A DNA stretch of 64,000 bases from Auanema rhodensis (taxonomy: Eukaryota > Animalia > Nematoda), in the NCBI GenBank assembly GCA_964057225.1, contig OZ059897.1:12524001-12588000 (forward strand), written 5' to 3'. The translations under genes were made by a program, and so were the position numbers. The notes below the pieces were generated by a model that was not told the DNA's origin, did no database searches, and was given only the letters and a program-made list of their open reading frames with translations. Shown here piece by piece: positions 1-23,600 of this stretch (position 1 is its first letter; each line of letters begins with the position of its first letter).

Positions 1-3000
1 AGTATATTTTACAGATTGCAGAAGATTTAAATATATTAAACAGCCGAAAATTGTAATAGAATTTGATGTAAGCTACGAGTTCATTCAGGGACTACAGGAA
101 AGAATTCCACGAAAATTAAAAATGGTTGGCCTGGTGATTTTTAAAAGCTGCCAAGGTATATCTATGGAACTAATCTCAATGCTCAAACTAGGAGAATTTC
201 GAAACGGAAGATGAAGTATGAAAAGAATAATTACATTTGATTTAAAATAATGGAGCATGAATTGAGAGAGAGCTAAAATTGACATTTGGAGTGGAGCATC
301 TAGAAACATAGATGAGAAGAACCGAGCAACACCACTCCATGACATCAGGTATATTTCGGAGACAAAACGGACAATCAGAATCGACAAAAGAGGAAAGTGA
401 ATACAGAAAAAGATGTAGGAGATGACGAAGAAGATGAAGATGACAGACGACAAGAAGAAGGAATTTATAACACTTAAAACAAATACAAGACCACCGAAAG
501 AGACAAGAAGAAAGGTTTGGAAAACGACATAGTTATTAGGTTTTAACACAAGTATTATTCTTTTTTTTTGTTTTGCAACTATCAGCAATTTTTTTACTTT
601 TTAAAAATTCGAAAAAAAAATGTTCAGCCTGTACAAATGATAGCAGATTGAAAAAAACATACAAGGAAAGCTACAAATAAAAATGAGAAAACAAGAGTAA
701 TATATGTATATCTATACATATCAGAAGAATGAACAAAACAAAATGTTTATATGAATAAGACTAAGCATAGCTATTAATGTATCAATATATTTGTATATTT
801 GTATAATAACTATCAATCTAATCTTAATTTTAATATATTTTATGCGCGAAAAAGTAAATAATGTAATGATCATAACTTAATTTATGAAAAGTTGCTCAGA
901 ATTAATAATCGCAAAAATGAAAGGTGAAGCTAGCTCAAATTTGATCGTTCAATTCAGTTGTCCACAAATTTGTTGAAGCACCTATATATGCTTTCGATTG
1001 AATGTAAGGCTTCATCAGAAGTTAGTATAAAGTTTTAAATAATTAATATAATCTTTAAAATACTCTGTACGGCAAATAGAAGTTTACGTTATGCTGGCAG
1101 GATGAAAGATAAAACATTTGCCATTTATGTATTTACGTAATCAACAAGAGAAATATTATTAAAAGAAAAGTATTTGATTGACAATATATCGAGAAGAGAA
1201 TTTGTTAATTTCTATCGAATCTAATTCGACGATCAAAATTTTTCTTTCAATAAGTCTAAATATATTTTTCACGTAAATGTAAAGTATAATCAGCGGAAGA
1301 TGATACAAAAAATAATAATCCATAAAAAGGTGGATACAAAGCTCAACATGCTCAACCTATTCTTGTTTTCTATTTATAAGTCAGAGAAATATGAATGAAT
1401 ACGTAATATAAGATTAAGATGTATATATTACATTTTGATTTAAACTTTCAGAAAATAAATATAAAATAAAAAGACAATTATTAGAGAATATCATATAATG
1501 ACTATATTGAAAATGAGAAAATCAAATAGTTGTGTAAAAATGTAATGAACTGAAAGCATTTTAACCTTGTTTTCCATAACAACTCAGATGTTGTAGGAAG
1601 AACAGAGAGTTTTTTATGAAACAAGTTTTCAATTTTATTTCTTTCAAACATAAAATCTCAACAATTTCCTTTTTTTTATAATTTGTAATGTAATTACTAT
1701 ATATATAAAAAGATAAATAAACAATATAATGACACACAATATGTACAATATATAATAATATAAACAATCAACTAAAATATATAATCAATTAACCGTTTTT
1801 TTCTGAAAATAATTAACCTACATAGCAGATATGCGTCGATACATACATATTAGGACTTTTGAAATACGAGTGTTGTAGATGTTTGCTCAATATGAATGAA
1901 ACATACGCTTTCTCTTTCTCTGTTCGCCAATGATTCTTTCCCTCTTTCTATCTCATTTTCCCTTTCTCATACTCTCTTCGTAGTTCGTTATCATTCTTTC
2001 TATTTTTCTTTCTCTGAGCCTCTCGAAAGGTAAAGCTAAATATTGAGGATAGAATTTTAGGCTTTATCATTCGTTTCCTTCTTCTTCTTCTTAGTTCTTA
2101 TTTAGCAAAATGAGAAAATATATACATATATACGATATATAGAAAATAGAAATAGTAAAAATATGGTATATATGGTTCCAAAAAAAAATATATAAATATT
2201 CCTTTATAATTCTTTTTTTTTTGTGCTCTTCCAGCAAAATTGATCAATATGTTATATGCTAGTTGTTACATTTAAAATGCGTTGATTTTCATATAAAAAC
2301 TTATAAATAATACTTAAACGTGATCGTTATACAAAAGTAGTACAATTTGAATGGTTTAACTCAGAAATACATGTGGGACAGTCGTAGCTATGGGATTTTG
2401 ATGGTATTCAACACAACAAAAAAATGATATTGAAATGAATCATATTTTCTATATATTTGGTATTGAAACATATATAACAAGAAATTCTTATAAAATAAAT
2501 GTATTTCATTGAAAAATAGTAAAAATATGGTTACATATCTGTCAATCATCATATAAAAATGAATAAATTGTACTTTCTAAGAATACAAAAGAGTACAGCT
2601 GTTTAAAAATATGATGGATATATCAAGATTGTAATGAAAAGTAGAATTCAAATTCTTATAGAGAAGTAGAATTCAAGCTCACTTATTGCAGTTTTAATTT
2701 TAAATAATTTTATACTGTTAATATTTAGATAAACATTAATCACGTGATAAAAAATATGATCTATTTAATTTATTTGAATGTTGAAAATTGAGTTTAATTT
2801 CAAATATTATATAGTGAATATATTACATTTACAGATCAGTATTGAGACTTATAATGAGATAGAAAATATGAAAAAGAGACGAATAAATTGATGTATGAAG
2901 TAACAAATTGAACACAAAAAAAAGAATATGAGCAATAAAAAGTGAATATATAAGGGAATCAAAGAAAGATTGAAATTAAAAATGTAAAATATGTACATTA

Positions 3001-12277: not shown

Positions 12278-15200
12278 TTAATAACGATATAACTTAGCCT
12301 GTTCTCGATTGGCTGAAGTTCGATGTTCTCCACCTAATGTGTAGTAGGCAGATGGGTCATTTGGATAAGATACGTATGGTTGCGTTGACGGTGGGCGGGT
12401 TGATGATGGTGGAGGAACACCAGGCAGGGTTTCCTCGTGCTGTTGCGATTTAGAGCCAACCTGGAACAAACAGATTTTTTGTTGTTGTCTATATGGTTGT
12501 CATCTTCTTTTATTTTATTTTCTATTTATGTCTTTACTACTCTCCACTTTTTTGCCAATCTATCGTTTCCTCCCCCCTTTTACTTTTTTCTCTCTTCTAC
12601 TTCTCTGCTACTTCTTCCTTTCGCTAATTTTCTAGTCTTTGGACCACAATCAATATTCTCAGCTATTTTTCGTTCTTAGAGATAAATGGAATAGGAGATG
12701 CCAAAGAGCAGAGAGAAAATCCTGATGTGTAGCGCTTTTTTGCCGGTGGCCTTATTCCTCAGTAGTAATTTATTTATTTTAAGTGTTGTTTGTTATGATA
12801 GTTTTTAGTTCAAATGTAAAAATCTCACCTTAGTATACCATTCGTGATATGTTGTTTCTCCTACTCCATCTGGAATTCCTTCTTGTTCTACTCCTGGTGG
12901 ACTTGGCTGGCCACTAGGCTTTGTTGAAGCAGTTGTAGTTTGTGAGTAATGTCGATGATAAGCGGCATTATCAAAACCCAATGGTGCTTTCTTCATTCCC
13001 ACTAAATAATGATAATTCTTGATTGTCCGGACGGTTTGCAAATGAAAAAAAAAAGAAAGAAAAAGCAATAACTCACTCGTTCCATATGGATAATTGGGTG
13101 GTGGAATAATTGGGTATGAACTCTGGAAATGAAAGAATAAATTGATTTGAAGGTAATACCAAACATACATAACGTCTTGAAGATCTACACTTGCAAATTA
13201 AACAGCATGTACAAGCAATAGCCAAAATAAGAAGAATTGAAGCACTTCCGATGATGACGATGTTACGTAAGAGGTCGGGAGACATAGAAGCTTCCATGAT
13301 TGGATTTTCTGAAAAAAAATTTATTTGGTATATATTAAGTTACATTTGCTTGGTTTCTATAAAATAAACAGAAAATTTGATAACTTACCAATTTCTTTAG
13401 CTTTCACAGTGCTTGCCTCGATAGCTAAGTCGCCAATCTTTCCACGAATAGCATTCTCTTCTAATAAGCTCTTAATTTCAATTGGACGAGGTACAGACTT
13501 AGTTGAGAGAACCTGAAAAAAAGAAAAACCATTTAGATTCAACTATTTTAGTATGTTTTACTTCAAACTCAGCGATAACGGATCCCTTTGAGTATTCGAA
13601 GATCTTGGATACCTGCATTCCCTTCCATCTTTTATCGAGCATACCATTGATCTGGAGAAAACAAATTACTTAACACGAAAACAAGTTTTTTCAAACTTAC
13701 AGCTGAGGAGACTTGTTTAGTGAAGCTCTGATAGTATTCCGTTTGAGGATCAGCAAGAGCTGGGATATATTCGCGATTAAGAATACGCACCCAGAGACGG
13801 TAGCGAGATTTAACTGGTTCAGTAGGTTCGTAAACAGTGTAAGCTGAAACAAGAATTGTATCAGAAGTCGTTACATTCGATGACGTCAAATTACCTGGTT
13901 TCTTAATAAGAGGTGGCATCTGAACTGTTGGCTTAATAAATGGAACATTGGATGAGTCAACAGGTTCATTAGGAAGACTGGTTGTAGTAGTGACTGGCTT
14001 CTTCTTTTCTGGAGTCTTCTCAGCAATCTTTTCGGTAACTTTCTCAACTGTAGTCTGGGTGGTTGGTGGAGCAGAGGTTTCTGTAGTTGTGGTGGATGTC
14101 TGTCCAACAGTTGTGAGAGTTTTATCAACAGAGCAAGTTCCCAAGCAGATCTGAATAGATAAACTTGAAAAGTGTGGATTTAGAATATTATATTTCTACC
14201 TTGTTATTGCTTACAACAGGTGTATCAGCATGCTTACGTAATTCGCCATTCTTCTCAATAATTCCAGAACTTGGAGTATATAGAAGATATACACACTTTT
14301 GAAGATTAATATCATCTTTATCTTCACTGAATAATTCACGAGAGAAGTTAGCAATGAGAATTCCTTCATTATATAATGTCTGAAAATTAATTAATTCAAT
14401 TATTCCATATATATTAAAAAAAAAAAAACTTCAAAAAACATACCTCAACATCAAAAATATCTTGCTGTTCATCAACAACTGGTCTACCGTAATGAGGCAT
14501 GAACTGATCAGTTACTGTAGCTAGCCCATCTTGACTTCCCATGATGATAACATCAGATTGAGCCATGCTTCCATCGATGGAGAATCCAAGTGCAGACCAT
14601 TCGTTTTCATTGAGAGAAGTTTTAACTGTGAATCGAGCAGTGGTTCCATCACTCATCCAAGATATAACGTATGAGCACTCTTCACCCTTACATCCATCAG
14701 GATGAGAATAGGTTCCAGTGCAAGTTGATTGTGTAACATGAATTCCATGCTCGGTTGGCTCAACCTTCTTATCTATAAATGAACAACTTTAATTGGTATT
14801 CTTCAACTTATAATTTACCTTCGAAGAAGTCAATACTTAATACTCCACGTTGATTCTTTCCGTGATATTTGAAAAATCCTGGGGCAAAGAAGTTTGGATC
14901 AGCCTGAATAGCTGGGCCTCCAGTAGTATGTTGGTAATTTTCAGGATCAGCTCCCTTAGACCAAATAACTGTCATAGGTCCAGGTGTGATGGAGTGATCA
15001 TACTTATCCGAGCCTAGAATGCTCACAATGATTCTGCTAATTTCAGTTGATGTTTCTTACTCTTTAATTTTCTTCTGAACACAACAGTTGTGATTCCATC
15101 TTCATAGAAGGCAGCAGAAGATTCTAACGTATCTTCTCCACCAAAGAAACTGTCAGGTCTTGGAGTAGCCTTGCTTGGAGAGTAGAAGTCTTTTACACGT

Positions 15201-18200
15201 CCACGTCCATCAACAACAGCTCCAACAACCATGTCCGTACATTCCATAGCATTACCTAAGATATATAACATAGTAAATCATGTTAATATATCAACAATAT
15301 TATTAGAAGTTAATACTTAATTCAAATTTAATTTTTCACGTAATCTACACTTGCAAACTATTTTAATATCATTTTCATCTATGTTGCTGATGCAAACGGT
15401 TGTTCTCTCTTCGTTTTCGCGCTTTGGAAGCTTAATTGATATTATTTCCTAATCTAATAAAATTTTTTCGAGCATATCAAGAAAATTTGTCATACTCCGC
15501 ACTTTTATCAGTTTTCTATGAAACGTTTCAGCATAAATAAATTGAAGCTTACCACGTTTAGGATTTGGTGGCTGGACAGCAGCTTGTCTACGGACTCTGA
15601 CCCGAATCGGCGCCTTATCAGTGGTTATTGATACTCCTTTTTCATCACAGAGACAGATCTTGTTGGTGCTAACGCGTGGCTGGTACAAATCATGATAACC
15701 TGCAAACATCCTCGATCGTACTTAATGAGACCTCTTTGAAACACTGGTTAAAATTTCGAGAAAAGATTCTTATCAAAGTACTTTCGATGTACATGAGGAT
15801 ATTCCAAGAATTTTGAAATCAAATCTAATCAGCTAACCAATGGCACGAAAGATGGTACGAAAAATTAAAAAAAAGGGGAAATTAACGTTTTTCGTTATTT
15901 ATTTAACAAAAAAAACTTACCGATTGGAGTACGTGGATTAGTGAAGTCGCTGCTCTTCTTAGCAATTACACGCCCACCACCAATTGGATACATGAAATAA
16001 TAGCATTCATCAAGTGGGAAATCAGTCAAAGGATCAGAAGTTATAACTTTTCTCTTGAAGGATATTGTCTAAAAATACTGATTTAGAAACAGAGCTGCCT
16101 AAAGCATTTGAACCTGCATGTCTTCAATCATTGAACCACCGATATCATAGATATCTTGACGATCAGCTGGATCAATTGCAGGAAGTTGTCGTCCATAAGC
16201 AAAACGATCAGTTACAAATGCTTTATTTTCATAAACCCATCCGGTGTATATGTCACTGTTGGCCATTTGTCCATCTCTGAAATAGTCATGAAAATTATGA
16301 ATTCAAACTATTATCTTCATACTTAGAGAATCCAATTCCAGTCCATCTTCCCATATTTCTGCTAGAAATATTGAATTGAACTTCCTTGTTATCAGAAATA
16401 TATTTCCATCTAGCAATGTACTCGCATTCAGAATCTTGACAGTCAAGAGGATATCTATATTCTGTTTCGCATTTAGCTTGATTGCCAGCTGAAATTTATT
16501 TTTGAGATATGAGAGGTTTTTAAATTATTTTCTTACAGTTCACAGGCTTCTTGTCTTCATTGCAGTTACGGATACATACTTGTCTATCGGATACAAGAGG
16601 AGTGTCAGAATGAATTGTGACGTTTCCACTCTGTTAACATATTATTTTAAAATTAAATTCATTTCTATAAGTACTTACCTCATCGAGTTTACCACCAGAA
16701 ACTGGGAACATGAGCTTCCAGCATTCAGATGAGAATTGCTTGTCGGCTTCATCTCCAGTATCACGTTTGCGGATGAATTGAGCACGAAGAAGCCCATTCT
16801 CATGTGTTCCAACAACAGAGGTAACATCATTCTTTTCGTCAAGTTTTGGAGCTCCATATCCTTCACTGGTCATATCGTGAACAGATAATACTCCGTTGAA
16901 GGATTTGACAATAATCATATCAGCTCCCACCATAGTTCCATCAGCACTAAATCCGACACCGGTCCATGAGTTAACATCCATCTTAGTTTCCAAAGAGAAT
17001 TCAATCTCATCAGAGTCTTCAACATAATTCCAATTCAACTTATACTGACAATCTAATTGGCATCCAGCGGGGAAACGGAATTCTCCATAACAAACATCTC
17101 CATCAACTTTAGGCTTGAGCTCACGTTTAGGAGTTGTTCGTGTAGCTGTAGTAGTAGTTACAGCAGGCTTTGATGTTGTAGTAGGAGAATCTAATTCACA
17201 ATCTCCCCAGTAGACACAGATTCCTTGAGAGTTTCTGGCATACCCTTGCAAGCAAGCACAACCTGGTTCTGAACACTTGGTACATTCATCTCGGGTGAAA
17301 ATTGTTTGACAATCAGCTTCACATAAGTTTCCACATTCGTTGATTGTTTCGTTAACAGCACAAGTTAATGGAACAATAGGTACAGATTTGGAGTGAGATG
17401 TGGTCATGGTGGTTGGAATAGTAGTTGTGCTTTCAGCTCGGACTTCTACAGTAACTGGCTGAGAACTCTTAACAACTTCAGTGGATGCTTCGGATTCATC
17501 ATTGTGGAAGTGAGTTTCCAAATCAGGACAATCTCCCCAATAGATGCATTGTCCATTGTGGCGAACATAGTTATCAGCACAAGTACAATCAGGCTTTTCA
17601 CAACTAGCTGGGCATGGAGCAGTGTCATACATGTTGGCACAGCTAGGTTCGCAAGCTGTTCCACACTTAGCAAAAGTAGAGTTAGCAGGACATGAAGGCT
17701 CTTGCTAAAAATTTATATTTTAATAATTGTATTTATTTATTTCAAAGTTATACCTCTTTATCGCAAAAATCGAATGGTACGCAAGCATCTTCCTCATTTG
17801 TCATACGGACGTAACCTTCTTTGCAAATACATCTTGGGGTTCCACATTGTCTTGGACAGTTTGGAATAGTCTCTGGGAAACGAGTCCAATCACATGAAGC
17901 TTCACAATCACGAGAAGTTTCAGCACATTCAGTCCAAACTTCATTTGGTCCACATTGCTCACCTATAGATAAATTAAATAATAAACAAGTTATATATACG
18001 GTATGGTACCACTATCTTTGGTTTCATGTTCGATAGCTGATTGGACTACGGTATTATTATTTTGGAAAACATGATGTTCAGGAACCTTGATTTCGATTTT
18101 CTTGAGATGAGCTTTAGCTGGAACGATATGAGCATGATATGTTATGTTTATAAATAAACATACGATCTTCCTGTGGAATCATGCTTTCACAAACATAATC

Positions 18201-20657
18201 AACTGGCTTAAACCCAATAGCAGCCCAGGATTGTCCAGGATAGCGTAAAACCATTTCAATTTCGTTCTGAAAATCCGATCTCTGTTATCAAAAACTTTTT
18301 TTTGAATTGTAAGCTATACACTTACTCTTAGAATTCTCCAAAAAATCTTATTATCTTTAGCTTCTCTCATATTATACAGAGACTCGTCAAAATCAGACAA
18401 AGAACGGAAAACGGTTGATTCTAAAATGATGTTTTCAGTTAATTTGTGTTCTGTTTAGTTGACTGTTAACCTTTTTCACAACGTACTCCATGTCGTTCAC
18501 TTGGGCAATAGCATTGTGTTCTTGGATCATCAGCATTCTTCTTGCAAACTCCTTGAACTCCACAATCATCATTTGAAGTACATTCTTCTATAAATAGATG
18601 TTTCGTTATTTATTGCTAATTTCCAATTCTTTCATTATTTGTTATTCAAAAAACAAATGACTAACCAGCATATTGACATTGGCTACCAGAATATCCACTA
18701 TCACAAATGCATTTTCCGCCAATTCTTTTACCTCGTGTAAGACATGAATCACCATCGGGAATTGCTGCAATTTAGATATTTGTCATCAGTTTCATTTAAC
18801 ATGTTTCAACTTTACAAATAGTTTGTTAAAAGTTTTTTTCATTTTATACGAACAGCATATTTGCTCTAAAGATATTTTTCATTTTAATGCTAACGTTCGA
18901 CAGATGTAAAGCGTAATATCAGGGTACAGAAGTGGTTGAACAAGAAGGGAAGAGAGGGAGGGGGGTGGTGGCTGCTAAAATGACCGACCCAAATTTGACA
19001 ACACTTTCTATCGTCGTTCAACACCATGTATAATGTCTTAGGTCAAGAAAATTTCGTTTATTGTTCAAATTCTCTTGGTACATAGCCAGCCGATGACTAG
19101 ACACGCTTTTGGCGTTGTCTTTTACAAAAAAACGACATCGTTCAAGTTTTTGACGACACAGTCTTCATCATAGACGACGTCTGTGGTCAGCGCTCATAAT
19201 GCTGTTCACTCCAGTAATTGTCATTGACCATAAAATCATATAAAATTGCATTTGTTCTTTTGAATACATGTATCAAATAGAAAAAAAGGTGATTCTATGC
19301 ATTCAATAGCTTAATTTTGCAAAAAAACAGTTGGAAAAACTTTTGAAAAATCACGATAGAGTCACATAAAAATCATTATATTGGGTGAAATTATGTTTTT
19401 GAGGAAGATTTGTAGTATTTTTATGAATAATTTTAGTTCAAGTTGTATTTTTTGAAGTGTTAATCTATAATACCTTTAACGATATTGACATCAGCACAAC
19501 TGTAGAAAAAGTATTCTTCACCATATTCGGTAGCTTGATGAGTCAAACGAATGGCACAGTTCATACACTCAAAATGAGCTGGTAACTCAACAGTTTTAGA
19601 TGATTGTCTGAAGGTAATTCCATAAAAATTTTTTAAAATATCTGAAAAGTTCTTACGTGATATTGTATTCATCACGGAAATTGGCAAATATAGCAATAGG
19701 CTCATCCAAAGCATTCAATACTTCCAATCGGATTCCTCCCTAAAATAGTAAATATGATCATAACTCCTATTCATTGATTTATTAGAGTTACATAACTCAT
19801 AAGTTTCATAGTTTGATTATATAACAATTTATTATTAGTTGGTTGATTTAAGATCTTTATGAGATTTAAGTAATAAGAGACCAACGATATAGTAACGGCC
19901 TCCAGAATAACCTTGGCCTATGAGGGAGAGCTAAGCCTAACTAGTTGCGGAATAGATCAGAGATAAAGATAGATAAAGATAGTTAACATTGTCTCTTTAT
20001 ACTATTCTTTTGGTATATAAACTAACTATTATAAAGAGCATTTTTTGGATATTTTATAGACATTCATATAGTTGATACGTCATATGTAACTAATAAATGA
20101 AAATTTGAAAACGAATAAAGAAATATTTGAAAAAATTATTTTAATTAAATAAATTAAAAATTTTATTTGGGTCTTAATTAGTAAAATAACTTACCATATG
20201 TGGAATTGCTGTAAACCATTCGATATCAACAATTGAACCAGATTCCAAGAATGTTCGGACACCTAGAACAATGCTTTAAAGAAAAATTAAATTTTTTTTT
20301 CCATAGATTTGACCAAAAGATTGAAAAATTACAATACTTATGCAATAATTTCTTGAATAGAACATATAATTTATTTTTTTCTCAAATGTTATAAGGTCAT
20401 CTTCAATAGAAGAAGTAAAACTTAAAGAAAGAATGAATACTATTTTCTTTGAAAAAGAAGAAAAATCTGATGAATCTTCAGAGATACTTACCATCATTGG
20501 CACCGGGCTTAGGTAGACCACATGCTCCTTGAGAGTTGTGATTAGAAAAATAATCAAGAGAAGGTGAACGAGCTGCTGGATAAGTTAATCGAACATGACT
20601 ATATGCTTGAGCTATTAATAGCAATAAGAGAAATGGTAATGAGAGCCTCCACGGCAT
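12278..20657 (-). CDS. Type I membrane protein, ~1,700 aa: signal peptide, His-brace LPMO-like domain, 2xEGF, split DOMON enclosing 3xTIL and 2xDOMON, a fourth DOMON, S/T-rich stalk, SEA, TM and cytoplasmic tail
   Basis: ATG at 20657 directly follows a TTCCAG acceptor. N-terminus MPWRLSLPFLLLLLIAQAYS|HVRLTYPAAR; EGF CICDSGYSGSQC; TIL CGPNEVWTEC, CPANSTFAKCGTACEPSC and CAVNETINEC. DOMON cores WTGVGFSADGTMVGAD, WTGIGFSKDGQMANSD, WSALGFSIDGSMAQSD, and WAAIGFKP...AMECTD. SEA with KGSVIAEF; TM IVIIGSASILLILAIACTCCLI; stop taken from ORF 12278-12469. The last exon is less certain. From memory it resembles C. elegans C09F9.2 (unverified). Confidence 0.9.
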
Positions 20658-23600
20658 CTGGAATTATTTTTTAGTTTAACAAACTGAATAATAAACATTT
20701 AAAAAGATAAGAAACAATCATTTATCACTTAGAAATCAGCACTTAAATCACGAAAAAAACACTTAAGGATGAAAATTGTTCTAAGTTTCCTATAATGGAA
20801 GTTCAGGTTTAAAGTGCTAAACACAAATATTTTGGAACTTCTATTGATGAATAATGAAAAAAAAAGGAAAAAAAATTGTTTGAAGGTGATTAAGTTTAGA
20901 ATACTTGTTGTCATTATTAAAATTATAGATATGTAAGTAAGAATGGTTAACTTTTAAATATATTTTTATGGTAAATAAAATAGTTTTGAGAAGTTTTTTT
21001 AAATAAAAAAGAAAGAAAAGAAAATATCTTAAAAGCTTTTGGTATAAGAATAAGAAAAAAACAGGAATACTATTTTGAAACATGCAAAGTTATAGGAAGG
21101 ATTTCGAAAACATTTAGGGATTTAATAATTTCTTTTGTTTGTTATTGAATTGGGAAGGATGATGAAGACATACTAGCAGTTTATAGGAGGATATACTATG
21201 AATCTGTGAACAGATCCATAATAGGTAGTATAGTAAAATTGAAAATGACCATAAACTATATGTATATAGATAGATAGATATATGCTAGTAGTAATTGTCG
21301 TTTTGTATCAAAATCTAGTATATATTACACAATCGTATAACTTCAAATATTAAAATTTATATGATTGTACATATATGTACTGAAATAATTATAAATAAGT
21401 CTCAAAGCACAATATGAGTTTCATGTTAAAGGAGAGAATCGGACAATTCTTACCGATCAGAATGATCTCATGTGGACGTGGAGATGAGGTTAGAAGGGAG
21501 GGAAGAGATAGTCCGAGGTCTCGAAGAAACAAACTGAGGAAGACTTGCGCAAGCATTTTATCAAGGACGCGAGAAGATAGAAGTAATAGATAAAAGCGGA
21601 AGATGAGAGAGTAAAGTAGAGGTTATGATGATGATGGTGGTTACCCTGATCCTATAAGATTTGAGGAATATGAGCATTTAAAGAAAATCTCAATAATTTG
21701 CAAGGATAAACAGAGAAGAGTACTATGAAAAGTTAAAGGAACATGGCATGAAAGAAGAAATAAAAATGAAATGATTATTTCGATTCAAAATTATGAGCAA
21801 TAGACTAATAGATTTTAGAAGAAGCAAATGAGGTAGTCGGGATCAGCTTCGCTCCACCCATGATAATTTAAAATTTAATTAGCTTTTCCTTTAAAAAAAG
21901 TTTTAAAAAAGTCTTATAAAATTATTGATAATTAGATAATTATAAGAAGAAAAAATGAATATACATAGACATATCCTCATATAAAAAGAGATAAAATGAT
22001 AAAAGTACGCGATTGCATTGATGATTATCTGAGAGAACATATCGTTCATTCATCAAACACTAATCACTACTAATTATCAACGACATCTGGCTAAATCTGT
22101 CAGAAATTTCAGGAAGATGAAAAGAAAAACGGTGATGATGGACAGTAAACCGGACAGGAATTGTATAGTTAATGATAACACTAAGAAAATAACTATAAAC
22201 TGATTGAGGAAAATAGAATACAAGCCCTTAAGCATAATTATTCTGAATAAAAATACTTGACGATAGAAATTCTCGAAATGTGCTTCTTATACTGGCGGAA
22301 CTGATTTCATACAGAAGATACAATAAGAAGTTCCAGTATATACGCTGAAAGTTTTTGAAAGCCAAACAAACTGAAGTGAACAAGACATCATTAGAACAAT
22401 TCCATCAACATCCTCATCATATTTCAAAGTTTTTTTTCTTTTGAATGAAAGTAGATAATTACTTTAACTACACAACGTAAATTGTTAACTTTTAAGTTTT
22501 GACATGTACCAACAAATAAGATAATTATATTTTAAAAGAGAAGGTCTATGAGATGATTTGTATTATGCTTAACTAATTATATATTTTATTTTCTGTTTGA
22601 TCTGTTTGAAAAAAAACAAAGCTCATGCAAAAGCTGTCTTAAAGAAAAAAAATTTGTTAAGAAAAAAATAAAAAATAAAAAATTGCAATATTTCATGTAG
22701 TTCTTCGTGTCTATCTTACCTCACTCTTCCACTTTCTGTAACCGTTTAAGTCAAAAATAAGAGGTGGATTAAGAACCGTCTTTACAATAGAAATCTGCCG
22801 ATCGGTAAAAGACAAAAGATTTTGCATTTTTTAGAAAGCGAGAACCATTTATCCTAACTATCTATTCTTTTAATCTTGAAGAGCCTCGTCCTTTTTTACA
22901 CGAACAACGGTTTGACAGGTTTAGATTAGAAAAACCGGGAAAGTCTCAAGATCGGCAAACTATATATTTATCGGATTTACTTGTCAAGATAACTAAACCT
23001 ATTAAATATAGCATCTCATAAATGACCTTATCTGGCTTTCATCAAGTTCCTATTTCCCATGGGGACTGTTGATGCCTTTAATATCATATTACTACTATAT
23101 GGTTATAAATAGTTAATAAGTAGAATTGTCTTGATTTATAACTATCTTCAGATATATTTTTCAAGAGAGAAAAAGTTATAATGAAAAAAGATAAAGAAGG
23201 GAAAAATGGAGAAAACATGGTAAAGAAGTCTTCGAAATGACGAATAGAAGGTCAAGGCTTCAAATCTTTATGGGATACAACATGACTGAGATAACATGAA
23301 TTTAAATAGGAGAGCTTTAAAATCGTTTCAAAACAGAAAAAAATAATTTTCAGATATCTTTTTCATCCTATTACATCTCTTACAATTAAAATATTTGGAT
23401 CATCTTCATACGATATCATTTCTTACCAACAACCAAAAAATTGGAAAATAAAAGAATAATTTCAATATCGTTATGGTTAGTTGTTAAAGTTTAAATGCAT
23501 ATCTTCTTTAATTATATGTCTATTGCTATTAAAGAATATTCACAAAGCTTTTCTATTCTAAAAATTTCACATCTTTTCACAATAGTTGTATAAAGGACAT

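What the first reader, a model, noticed from the sequence alone, without database searches (positions are those of the whole stretch)
14819..18352. Nested architecture: one DOMON is split by a ~700-aa insert containing 3 TIL and 2 complete DOMON domains
Seen: the first DOMON begins at ~18350-18190 (KIFWRILRNEIEMVLRYPGQSWAAIGFKPVDYVC) and stops after the WxxxGF strand. Its missing remainder (AMECTDMVVG...VKDFYS...TTVVFRRKL...MTVIWSKG...KYHG..QRG) resumes only at 15255. Three TIL domains, Thr-rich linkers and two whole DOMONs lie between. Each half has one Cys flanking the insert (YVC / MEC), which could staple the halves. Inference: five domains were inserted into the loop just before the heme-ligating Met, a rare nested arrangement that domain scanners would report as two fragments.
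Basis: partly seen in the sequence, partly recalled or inferred. Interest (0 to 1): 0.78.

Follow-up and report, generated by a model that had tools for sequence, protein, structure and literature searches.

The report
Split DOMON domain hosting five domains
A nematode surface-protein gene really does encode one DOMON (heme-type) domain cut in two by about 690 residues holding three TIL and two complete DOMON domains; all nematodes sampled share this layout, and it appears to be undescribed.

Summary

- **Transcript.** Spliced RNA contigs join every exon from 18766 to 13560 into one transcript. No hidden exon completes either half locally.
- **N-half (18326-18420 and 18164-18266).** It ends at ...WAAIGFKPVDYVC. 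A profile of this half matches the first strands of canonical DOMON domains (hhalign 91.7%, E 7.6e-7).
- **C-half (15061-15255 and 14819-15013).** It matches Pfam DOMON positions 40-108 (E 1.8e-12).
- **Relatives.** In Priapulus and one unidentified animal the same two halves lie 20-31 residues apart. They fold as one DOMON (DBH, Z 13.4).
- **Nested model.** In an AlphaFold model of the C. elegans orthologue C09F9.2, the N-half keeps pLDDT above 90. Single-domain sandwiches superpose across residues 21..868, so the halves pack together in the model.
- **Flanking cysteines.** Both are invariant in 48 homologues.

New here:
- The two-DOMON insert is pan-nematode. The TILs were detected only outside Dorylaimia.
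- Molluscs and an annelid put their own DOMONs into the same loop, probably independently.
- A furin-type R-x-K/R-R site (RVRVRR, 15587-15604) sits at the insert's C-edge in 23 of 24 nematode orthologues.

The function is untested. This is a new variant of a known kind (split or nested domains).

The parts
18326..18420 (-). Exon A: the linker after EGF2 and the first strands of the split DOMON (ends ..KIFWRILR, phase 0)
   Evidence: Splice joints 18420/18471 and 18266/18326. The family N-half HMM hits it at E 1.3e-8. 55-67% identical to orthologues.
18164..18266 (-). Exon B: the rest of the N-half (NEIEMVLRYPGQSWAAIGFKPVDYVC) and the start of the loop. The conserved Cys is at 18189-18191. The exon ends in phase 1.
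   Evidence: Joints. N-half HMM E 2.3e-14. hhalign of the N-half profile against canonical DOMON gives 91.7%, E 7.6e-7. The Cys column is invariant in 48 sequences.
18010..18117 (-).
   Evidence: Joint 18117/18164 and depth over 17961-18117. No BLAST hit in any orthologue. No hit to the DOMON HMMs. The equivalent C. elegans stretch has pLDDT 36-54.
17754..17962 (-). TIL domain 1 of the insert
   Evidence: Pfam TIL E 4.5e-9. Contig piece 17754-17960.
16679..17704 (-). TIL 2, a Thr-rich linker, TIL 3, a Thr-rich linker, and inserted DOMON INS1 (complete)
   Evidence: Pfam TIL, 2 stretches, E 9.8e-20. DOMON profile 2-122, E 2e-31. Contig piece 16679-17704.
16537..16630 (-). C-terminal tail of INS1 (..IHSD..C..C)
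   Evidence: Joints 16630/16679 and 16488/16537. Conserved in orthologues.
15921..16488 (-). Inserted DOMON INS2 in three exons (16323-16488, 16114-16276, 15921-16068)
   Evidence: Pfam DOMON profile 2-38, 39-87 and 93-124 on the three pieces. Joints.
15553..15699 (-). Link exon (phase 1 to 1): the YHD motif and ICLC tail of INS2, then RVRVRR (15587-15604), a furin-type site at the C-edge of the insert
   Evidence: Joints 15697/15919 and 15251/15549. R-x-[KR]-R lies 8-17 residues after ICxC in 23 of 24 nematode orthologues.
15061..15255 (-). C-half, part a: ..AMECTDMVVG..VKDFYS..TTVVFRRKLK. Met is at 15245-15247 and the conserved Cys at 15239-15241. The acceptor is in phase 1.
   Evidence: Pfam DOMON profile 40-108, E 1.8e-12. 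Family C-half HMM E 6e-31. The Cys and Asp columns are invariant.
14819..15013 (-). C-half, part b: ..MTVIWSKG..KYHG..QRGVLSIDFFE (last strands and the His motif)
   Evidence: Family C-half HMM E 9e-25, profile positions 69-135. Joints.

Best explanation
The gene is the orthologue of C. elegans C09F9.2 and belongs to the arthropod 'nahoda' family. It encodes a type-I membrane protein with this order: signal peptide, LPMO-like His-brace domain, two EGF domains, DOMON1, further DOMONs, SEA, TM. DOMON1 is a discontinuous domain. Its first four strands (exons A and B) and its remaining strands (15061-15255 and 14819-15013) are separated in the chain by 687 codons: a linker, three TIL domains, mucin-like Thr-rich linkers and two complete DOMON domains. 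The break lies in the surface loop between the W-x-x-x-G-F/W strand and the Met-x-x-x-Asp motif. This loop is a general length hotspot in the family, from 20 to more than 900 residues. The two halves reassemble into one beta-sandwich, probably stapled by a disulfide between the two invariant cysteines at the base of the loop. The insert therefore projects as an excursion from the face of DOMON1 that carries the Met motif. The two inserted DOMONs were already present in the nematode ancestor. INS1 probably arose by duplication of the downstream DOMON into a phase-1 intron. TILs were detected only outside Dorylaimia, which suggests they were added on the chromadorean side. I infer, but have not shown, that a proprotein convertase cuts at the conserved R-x-K/R-R site at the C-edge of the insert. 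That would turn DOMON1 into a two-chain domain held together by the sandwich and the disulfide. I also infer that the arrangement clusters several putative b-heme DOMONs next to the copper-type N-terminal domain on the cell surface.
For: Shown:
- One spliced transcript carries everything.
- Pfam and HMM domain content is as described.
- The N-half is homologous to DOMON strands.
- The halves are contiguous in Priapulus and in P0005, and the gap grades from 20 to 941 residues across 80 proteins.
- The contiguous homologue models as a single DOMON, pTM 0.83. Best matches are DBH, Z 13.4, and the CDH cytochrome domain, Z about 11, both over residues 7..228.
- In the nested C. elegans model the N-half has pLDDT 91-94 with the same four strands.
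- Sandwiches of about 110 residues align over 21..868 at rmsd 3.1-3.9 and Z about 6. Chains of the same kind give Z 5.6-6.3 over 21..225 on the contiguous model.
- C57 and C746 are invariant in 48 sequences.
- INS1, INS2 and the downstream DOMON each form a pan-nematode clade that includes Trichinella, with support 100/98 to 100/99. INS1 is sister to the nematode downstream DOMON, with support 84/83.
- R-x-[KR]-R is present in 23 of 24 nematode orthologues.
- The insert is 2061 nt and is flanked by phase-1 introns.
Against: - Packing was modelled on the C. elegans orthologue, not on the window's protein. That orthologue is about 55-76% identical per exon in BLAST against its 90%-identity cluster representative P0164. 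The tools return no PAE or coordinates, so packing is read indirectly from aligned ranges.
- Pfam itself never detects the N-half, even in contiguous homologues.
- Heme binding, the disulfide and cleavage are untested.
- In Trichinella and Trichuris, DOMON1 has lost the Met and His motifs, so any heme role of DOMON1 is not universal.
- Contigs cannot exclude a minor isoform that skips the insert.
Confidence: 0.8

Rival explanations
1. Cassette reading. The 2061-nt block of insert exons is an alternatively spliced cassette. The functional DOMON1 is made mainly from an isoform that joins exon B (donor after 18164) directly to the acceptor at 15255, giving an ordinary contiguous DOMON. The nested form would be a minor or regulatory isoform.
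For: Both introns are phase 1 and the block is a multiple of three, so skipping keeps the frame. Contigs drop rare variants, so absence of the skipped form is not shown.
Against: All four RNA runs give the inclusion form, at contig depths of 41-64, and no listed joint links 18164 to 15255. Every nematode gene model from more than 20 genera includes the insert. INS1 and INS2 are as well conserved as the rest of the protein.
Confidence: 0.1
2. Relic reading. The N-half is a vestigial remnant and the C-half is a truncated DOMON. They no longer form one domain. Each is either unfolded or packs against other parts, for example the EGFs or the inserted DOMONs.
For: Pfam does not recognise the N-half. 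Trichinellid DOMON1 has lost the Met and His motifs. The nested model has pTM 0.41 overall.
Against: The N-half is strongly conserved from echinoderm to nematode. G49 and C57 are invariant, and W27, E33, E35 and W50 are at least 90% conserved. It has pLDDT above 90 in the nested model. Single-domain sandwiches superpose over 21..868. The cysteine pair is invariant.
Confidence: 0.07
3. Annotation artefact. Two genes, or a nested gene inside an intron, have been read as one protein.
For: None beyond the unusual layout.
Against: Single contigs of 5.6 kb in three runs span all the exons, every joint has GT..AG ends and the frame is continuous. The insert has no start codon or signal-peptide exon of its own in the region read.
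Confidence: 0.02

Closest known systems
C. elegans C09F9.2 (NP_497053.1, UniProt O62055) and arthropod 'nahoda'-type proteins
   Same: It has the same order of parts: His-brace-like N-domain, two EGF, DOMON1 N-half, insert, DOMON1 C-half, DOMON, SEA, TM. Per-exon BLAST identity is 47-76%, measured against P0164, the 90%-identity cluster representative of C09F9.2.
   Different: The window comes from a different rhabditid species, and no near-identical protein is in the databases. Arthropod members have 109-530 residues in the loop, with no Pfam domain in the two I scanned. I found no paper describing the architecture. The single text hit for C09F9.2 is a toxicology study, which I did not read.
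Split PH domain of phospholipase C-gamma (two SH2 and one SH3 inserted in a PH loop) and the syntrophin split PH domain. These are cited from general knowledge and were not tested here.
   Same: A small beta-sandwich domain is interrupted in a loop by several complete, independently folding domains, and the halves reassemble.
   Different: This case is extracellular. The host is a DOMON, two of the guests are the same fold as the host, and there are five guest domains. A conserved disulfide pair and a furin-type site flank the insert.
Canonical DOMON and cytochrome domains: DBH DOMON (4ZEL) and the cellobiose dehydrogenase cytochrome domain (1D7B, 4QI3)
   Same: The fold of the reassembled domain matches: Z 13.4 to DBH and about 11 to the CDH cytochrome domain for the contiguous homologue. 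Met sits at Pfam profile position 42, with a downstream KYHG His (and sequence).
   Different: The known structures are contiguous. Heme binding by this family is untested.

Membership tests
DOMON domain (PF03351) for the split domain | Sequence match to the DOMON profile over its C-terminal two thirds | tested here: met
   window:15026-15277 matches profile positions 40-108, E 1.8e-12, 48 bits, above the 32.7 cut-off.
DOMON domain (PF03351) for the split domain | Sequence match of the N-terminal strands (profile positions about 1-39) | tested here: met
   Pfam alone fails here. A 53-sequence N-half profile aligns to canonical DOMON columns 21-58 of 144 at 91.7%, E 7.6e-7. The N-half HMM also hits the N-terminus of the window's own intact DOMON, residues 219-255 of the big exon, directly before the C-half HMM hit at 258-328.
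DOMON domain (PF03351) for the split domain | DOMON / CDH-cytochrome beta-sandwich fold built from both halves | tested here: met
   Tested on orthologues only. The contiguous Priapulus model gives Z 13.4 to DBH and 11.2-11.3 to CDH over residues 7..228. In the nested C. elegans model the N-half has pLDDT 91-94, and sandwiches align over 21..868. The window's own joined protein was not modelled.
b-heme-binding DOMON (CDH or CYBDOM type) | Met and His axial ligands at the conserved positions, and bound heme | tested here: inconclusive
   Met of AMECTD lies at profile position 42, as in the other DOMONs of the gene, and the KYHG His is present. Both are lost in Trichinella and Trichuris. Heme binding cannot be tested with these tools.
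Discontinuous (nested) domain | Both halves and the insert are on one mRNA and in one reading frame | tested here: met
   5.6-kb spliced contigs in three runs, all joints GT..AG, continuous frame.
Discontinuous (nested) domain | Relatives exist with the two halves adjacent | tested here: met
   The gap is 20 residues in P0005 and 31 in Priapulus P0194. It is 109-530 residues in arthropods, Haliotis, Holothuria and Gordionus, with no Pfam domain in the five gaps I scanned.
Proprotein-convertase (furin/kexin) substrate | A conserved R-x-K/R-R motif in an exposed linker | tested here: met
   RVRVRR lies at 15587-15604. The motif is present in 23 of 24 nematode orthologues, 8-17 residues after ICxC. 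The surrounding linker has pLDDT 37-49 in the C. elegans model.
Proprotein-convertase (furin/kexin) substrate | Actual cleavage | not testable with these tools
   Needs protein work.

The most novel reading that the evidence does not exclude
The Met-proximal loop of DOMON1 may be an evolutionary docking site that has captured whole DOMON domains at least twice, in the nematode stem and in lophotrochozoans. In nematodes the guest block would then be released from chain continuity by convertase cleavage at the conserved R-x-K/R-R site. The result would be a two-chain, disulfide-stapled cytochrome-type domain that holds two extra heme domains and three TIL modules against its heme face, forming a compact extracellular multi-heme relay feeding the His-brace copper domain.
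Probability: 0.2. Interest if true: 0.75.

Novelty: new variant of a known kind. Interest (0 to 1): 0.55.

Why it matters
Split domains hosting several guest domains are known mostly from intracellular signalling proteins such as the PLC-gamma split PH domain. Here an extracellular cytochrome-type fold is split by five domains, two of them copies of its own fold, and the arrangement is fixed across the nematode lineages sampled.

- **Annotation.** It explains why domain scanners under-count DOMONs in this conserved but uncharacterised family (C09F9.2 / nahoda).
- **Evolution.** It offers a clean natural case of exon-level domain insertion into a phase-1 intron, with graded intermediates in other phyla and probable independent recurrence.
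- **Experiments.** It suggests two concrete tests in C. elegans. One is an in-frame deletion of the insert. The other is a cleavage and disulfide map.
- **Biology.** These would bear on how a putative LPMO-like copper domain is coupled to heme domains on an animal cell surface.

Tried and rejected
- **Pfam on the N-half exons alone.** No hit at E up to 1, and none on the N-half of the contiguous homologue P0005 either. Pfam cannot decide the question, so I replaced it with family HMMs and hhalign.
- **A canonical-DOMON HMM built here.** It also missed exons A and B. Only the reverse direction and the profile-profile comparison worked.
- **A hidden exon completing either half.** Intron 15256-15552 has zero RNA depth. 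The extra exon 18010-18117 is real but is a non-conserved linker.
- **The window's own full-length protein in the databases.** It is not there. The best matches per exon are 55-85% identical, so I used orthologue protein ids for the structure work.
- **Literature.** Searches for DOMON+LPMO+nematode, nahoda, C09F9.2, and DOMON+'domain insertion' found no description of this architecture.
- **A single origin of all inserted DOMONs.** None of 200 bootstrap trees support it. The backbone of the tree is weak, so I call independence probable, not proven.
Full report
**What is in the sequence.**
The window is AT-rich and has short introns with GT..AG ends; its closest homologues are nematode proteins. 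The minus strand from about 20663 to 12800 carries one multi-exon gene. Exon-by-exon Pfam scans give this order:
- EGF-like hits at 18664-18771 and 18469-18609
- TIL at 17751-18011
- two TILs plus a complete DOMON (profile 2-122, E 2e-31) in the 1026-nt exon 16679-17704
- a second DOMON over three exons (profile 2-38, 39-87, 93-124)
- a DOMON fragment covering only profile 40-108 at 15026-15277 (E 1.8e-12)
- a further DOMON at 14417-14788 and 14191-14430
- a weak SEA match

The two exons holding KIFWRILR and NEIEMVLRYPGQSWAAIGFKPVDYVC get no Pfam hit.

**Transcript evidence.**
Four runs from one study hold about half of the sampled words of 13000-20700, as expected for spliced RNA. Laid on 13500-19400, three runs each give a single contig of about 5.6 kb that crosses every exon. 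All joints have GT..AG ends on the minus strand. This has four consequences.
- Both DOMON halves and everything between them are on one mRNA.
- The intron 15256-15552 is removed whole, with depth 0, so no exon there completes the C-half.
- The 147-nt exon 15553-15699 sits between the last inserted DOMON and the C-half.

The extra exon encodes a linker. It has no BLAST match in any orthologue and no match to any of my DOMON HMMs. Reading phases, exon B ends in phase 1 and the acceptor at 15255 is in phase 1. The eight insert exons total 2061 nt, or 687 codons.

**Is the N-half really DOMON?**
An exhaustive search with the big exon and a word search with the Angiostrongylus orthologue recovered the family. 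BLAST of the window's exon peptides, kept apart, against these proteins maps the same order of parts in nematodes of all major clades. The C. elegans member is C09F9.2 (NP_497053.1, O62055).

The decisive comparison comes from outside nematodes.
- In P0005 (a Logan assembly, taxon unknown) the two halves are 20 residues apart.
- In Priapulus P0194 they are 31 residues apart.
- Insects, horseshoe crab, scorpion, Haliotis, a sea cucumber and the nematomorph Gordionus have 109-530 residues there. In the five of these gaps that I scanned, Pfam finds no domain, only acidic or proline-rich repeats.

HMMs built from each half score the window's pieces, tested separately, as follows:

| Piece | E-value |
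|---|---|
| Exon A | 1.3e-8 |
| Exon B | 2.3e-14 |
| C-half, part a | 6e-31 |
| C-half, part b | 9e-25 |

The same two HMMs hit adjacent parts of the window's own intact DOMON in the big exon, residues 219-255 and then 258-328. Together the halves therefore equal one DOMON, broken between the G-F-S turn and the Met-x-x-x-Asp motif. A 53-sequence N-half profile aligns to canonical DOMON columns 21-58 of 144 at 91.7% probability, E 7.6e-7.

**Do the halves pack?**
The joined protein of the window has no reference, so I did not submit it. I used orthologue ids instead.

*Contiguous model.* Priapulus P0194:235-464, with a 61-row alignment, gives pLDDT 83 and pTM 0.83. It has four N-half strands at pLDDT 93-97 and a low-confidence loop. 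It matches:
- the human DBH DOMON: Foldseek E 1e-5 over 215 columns, and VIA Z 13.4, rmsd 2.6, range 13..228
- the CDH cytochrome domain: Z 11.2-11.3, range 7..228

*Nested model.* C. elegans P0233:221-1094, with a 48-row alignment, gives pLDDT 78. Its pTM of 0.41 is expected for beads on flexible linkers. The N-half (residues 11-50) keeps pLDDT 91-94 with the same four strands, and the C-half reaches 85-93.

In the second-look alignment, true DOMON chains choose the intact inserted DOMON (353..526, Z 12-15). About twenty single-domain Ig-type sandwiches of roughly 110 residues align over model range 21..868, with 104-114 residues at rmsd 3.1-3.9 and Z about 6. Chains of the same kind give Z 5.6-6.3 over 21..225 on the contiguous model. 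A 110-residue domain can only superpose across 850 residues of chain if the two ends are packed into one sandwich. This evidence is indirect, because the tools return no PAE.

The two cysteines flanking the loop are invariant in all 48 aligned sequences (C57, C746, and D748). In the window they are at 18189-18191 and 15239-15241.

**Evolution.**
Gap lengths by group:

| Group | Gap between halves (residues) |
|---|---|
| P0005, Priapulus | 20-31 |
| Arthropods, Haliotis, Holothuria, Gordionus | 109-530 |
| Trichinella, Trichuris | 436-485 |
| Chromadorean nematodes | 613-941 |

Trichinella has two DOMON hits in the gap. Trichuris has one full hit plus a second that comes out as two partial HMM pieces. 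Neither shows a TIL hit. Plectus already has TILs.

In a careful ML tree of 48 DOMON domains:
- Nematode INS1, INS2 and the downstream DOMON each form a clade that includes Trichinella, with support 100/98 to 100/99. The two-DOMON insert therefore predates the nematode crown.
- INS1 is sister to the nematode downstream DOMON (84/83).
- Lottia, Owenia and Ylistrum also carry one or two complete DOMONs in the same loop. These group with lophotrochozoan downstream DOMONs (94/87).
- No bootstrap tree, out of 200, unites all the inserts.

The backbone of the tree is weak, so independent capture is probable, not proven.

**A conserved basic site.**
The link exon carries the YHD and ICLC tail of INS2 and then RVRVRR (15587-15604). 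An R-x-[KR]-R motif lies 8-17 residues after ICxC in 23 of 24 nematode orthologues from all clades. Trichuris has KR dibasic sites instead. Some insects and Owenia also have such a site in the loop. I infer convertase cleavage at the C-edge of the insert. That would leave DOMON1 as two chains held by the sandwich and the cysteine pair. This step is not shown.

**Verdict.**
Rivals and their weights:
- an in-frame cassette that is mostly skipped: 0.1
- relic halves that no longer pack: 0.07
- an annotation artefact: 0.02

I found no paper describing this architecture. It is a new variant of a known kind, the split or nested domain. The closest analogue I can recall from general knowledge is the PLC-gamma split PH domain. 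Function is unknown experimentally. The mechanism offered, a multi-heme cluster held at the Met face of DOMON1 near a His-brace domain, is inference.

**Earlier notes of this scan.**
Note s1-373126 had already flagged the LPMO-like N-domain. I saw only a weak BIM1-like Pfam hit on the Tachypleus orthologue (E 1e-3). Note s1-373187 concerns the Met/His pairs, which I checked only at sequence level for DOMON1.

Noticed in passing
It encodes a non-conserved linker (..KAHLKKIEIKVPEHH..) between the N-half and TIL1.
   Followed up: yes
window 15587-15604 (-): RVRVRR, a furin/kexin-type site just after the ICLC tail of the second inserted DOMON. An R-x-[KR]-R motif is present at this place in 23 of 24 nematode orthologues.
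   Followed up: partly
P0045 (Lottia), P0046 (Owenia), P0081 (Ylistrum): Lophotrochozoan homologues also have one or two complete DOMONs inside the same DOMON1 loop. In the domain tree these group with their own downstream DOMONs, not with the nematode inserts. Their gene models were not checked against RNA.
   Followed up: partly
P0014 (Trichinella), P0017 (Trichuris), P0011 (Rhabditophanes): In the two trichinellids DOMON1 has lost the Met and KYHG-His motifs. In all three proteins the N-terminal domain lacks the His expected right after the signal peptide (..ISIRLIYPP....AAEIKLLYPP....SANIRLLSPP..). Any metal chemistry may therefore be degenerate in these lineages.
   Followed up: no
window 16276/16323 (-): The inserted DOMON INS2 has a phase-2 intron in the same G-F-S / Met loop (GFSK | DGQMANSD) where DOMON1 is split. 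Introns in this loop may have been the entry point for exon insertion.
   Followed up: no
window 19474-20597 (-); P0026:20-154: The N-terminal domain starts with His directly after the predicted signal peptide (..AYS|HVRLTYPAAR..). The Tachypleus orthologue gives a weak Pfam BIM1-like (LPMO-like copper) hit, E 1e-3, below the cut-off.
   Followed up: partly
public records behind P0014, P0167, P0181, P0187, P0002: Orthologues are named 'Teneurin-a', 'MOXD1', 'MOXD1-like protein 2' or 'Cytochrome c oxidase polypeptide II' in source databases. These names are probably misleading, since the proteins share the domain layout described here. The Angiostrongylus model P0002 is mispredicted exactly at the start of the C-half.
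   Followed up: no
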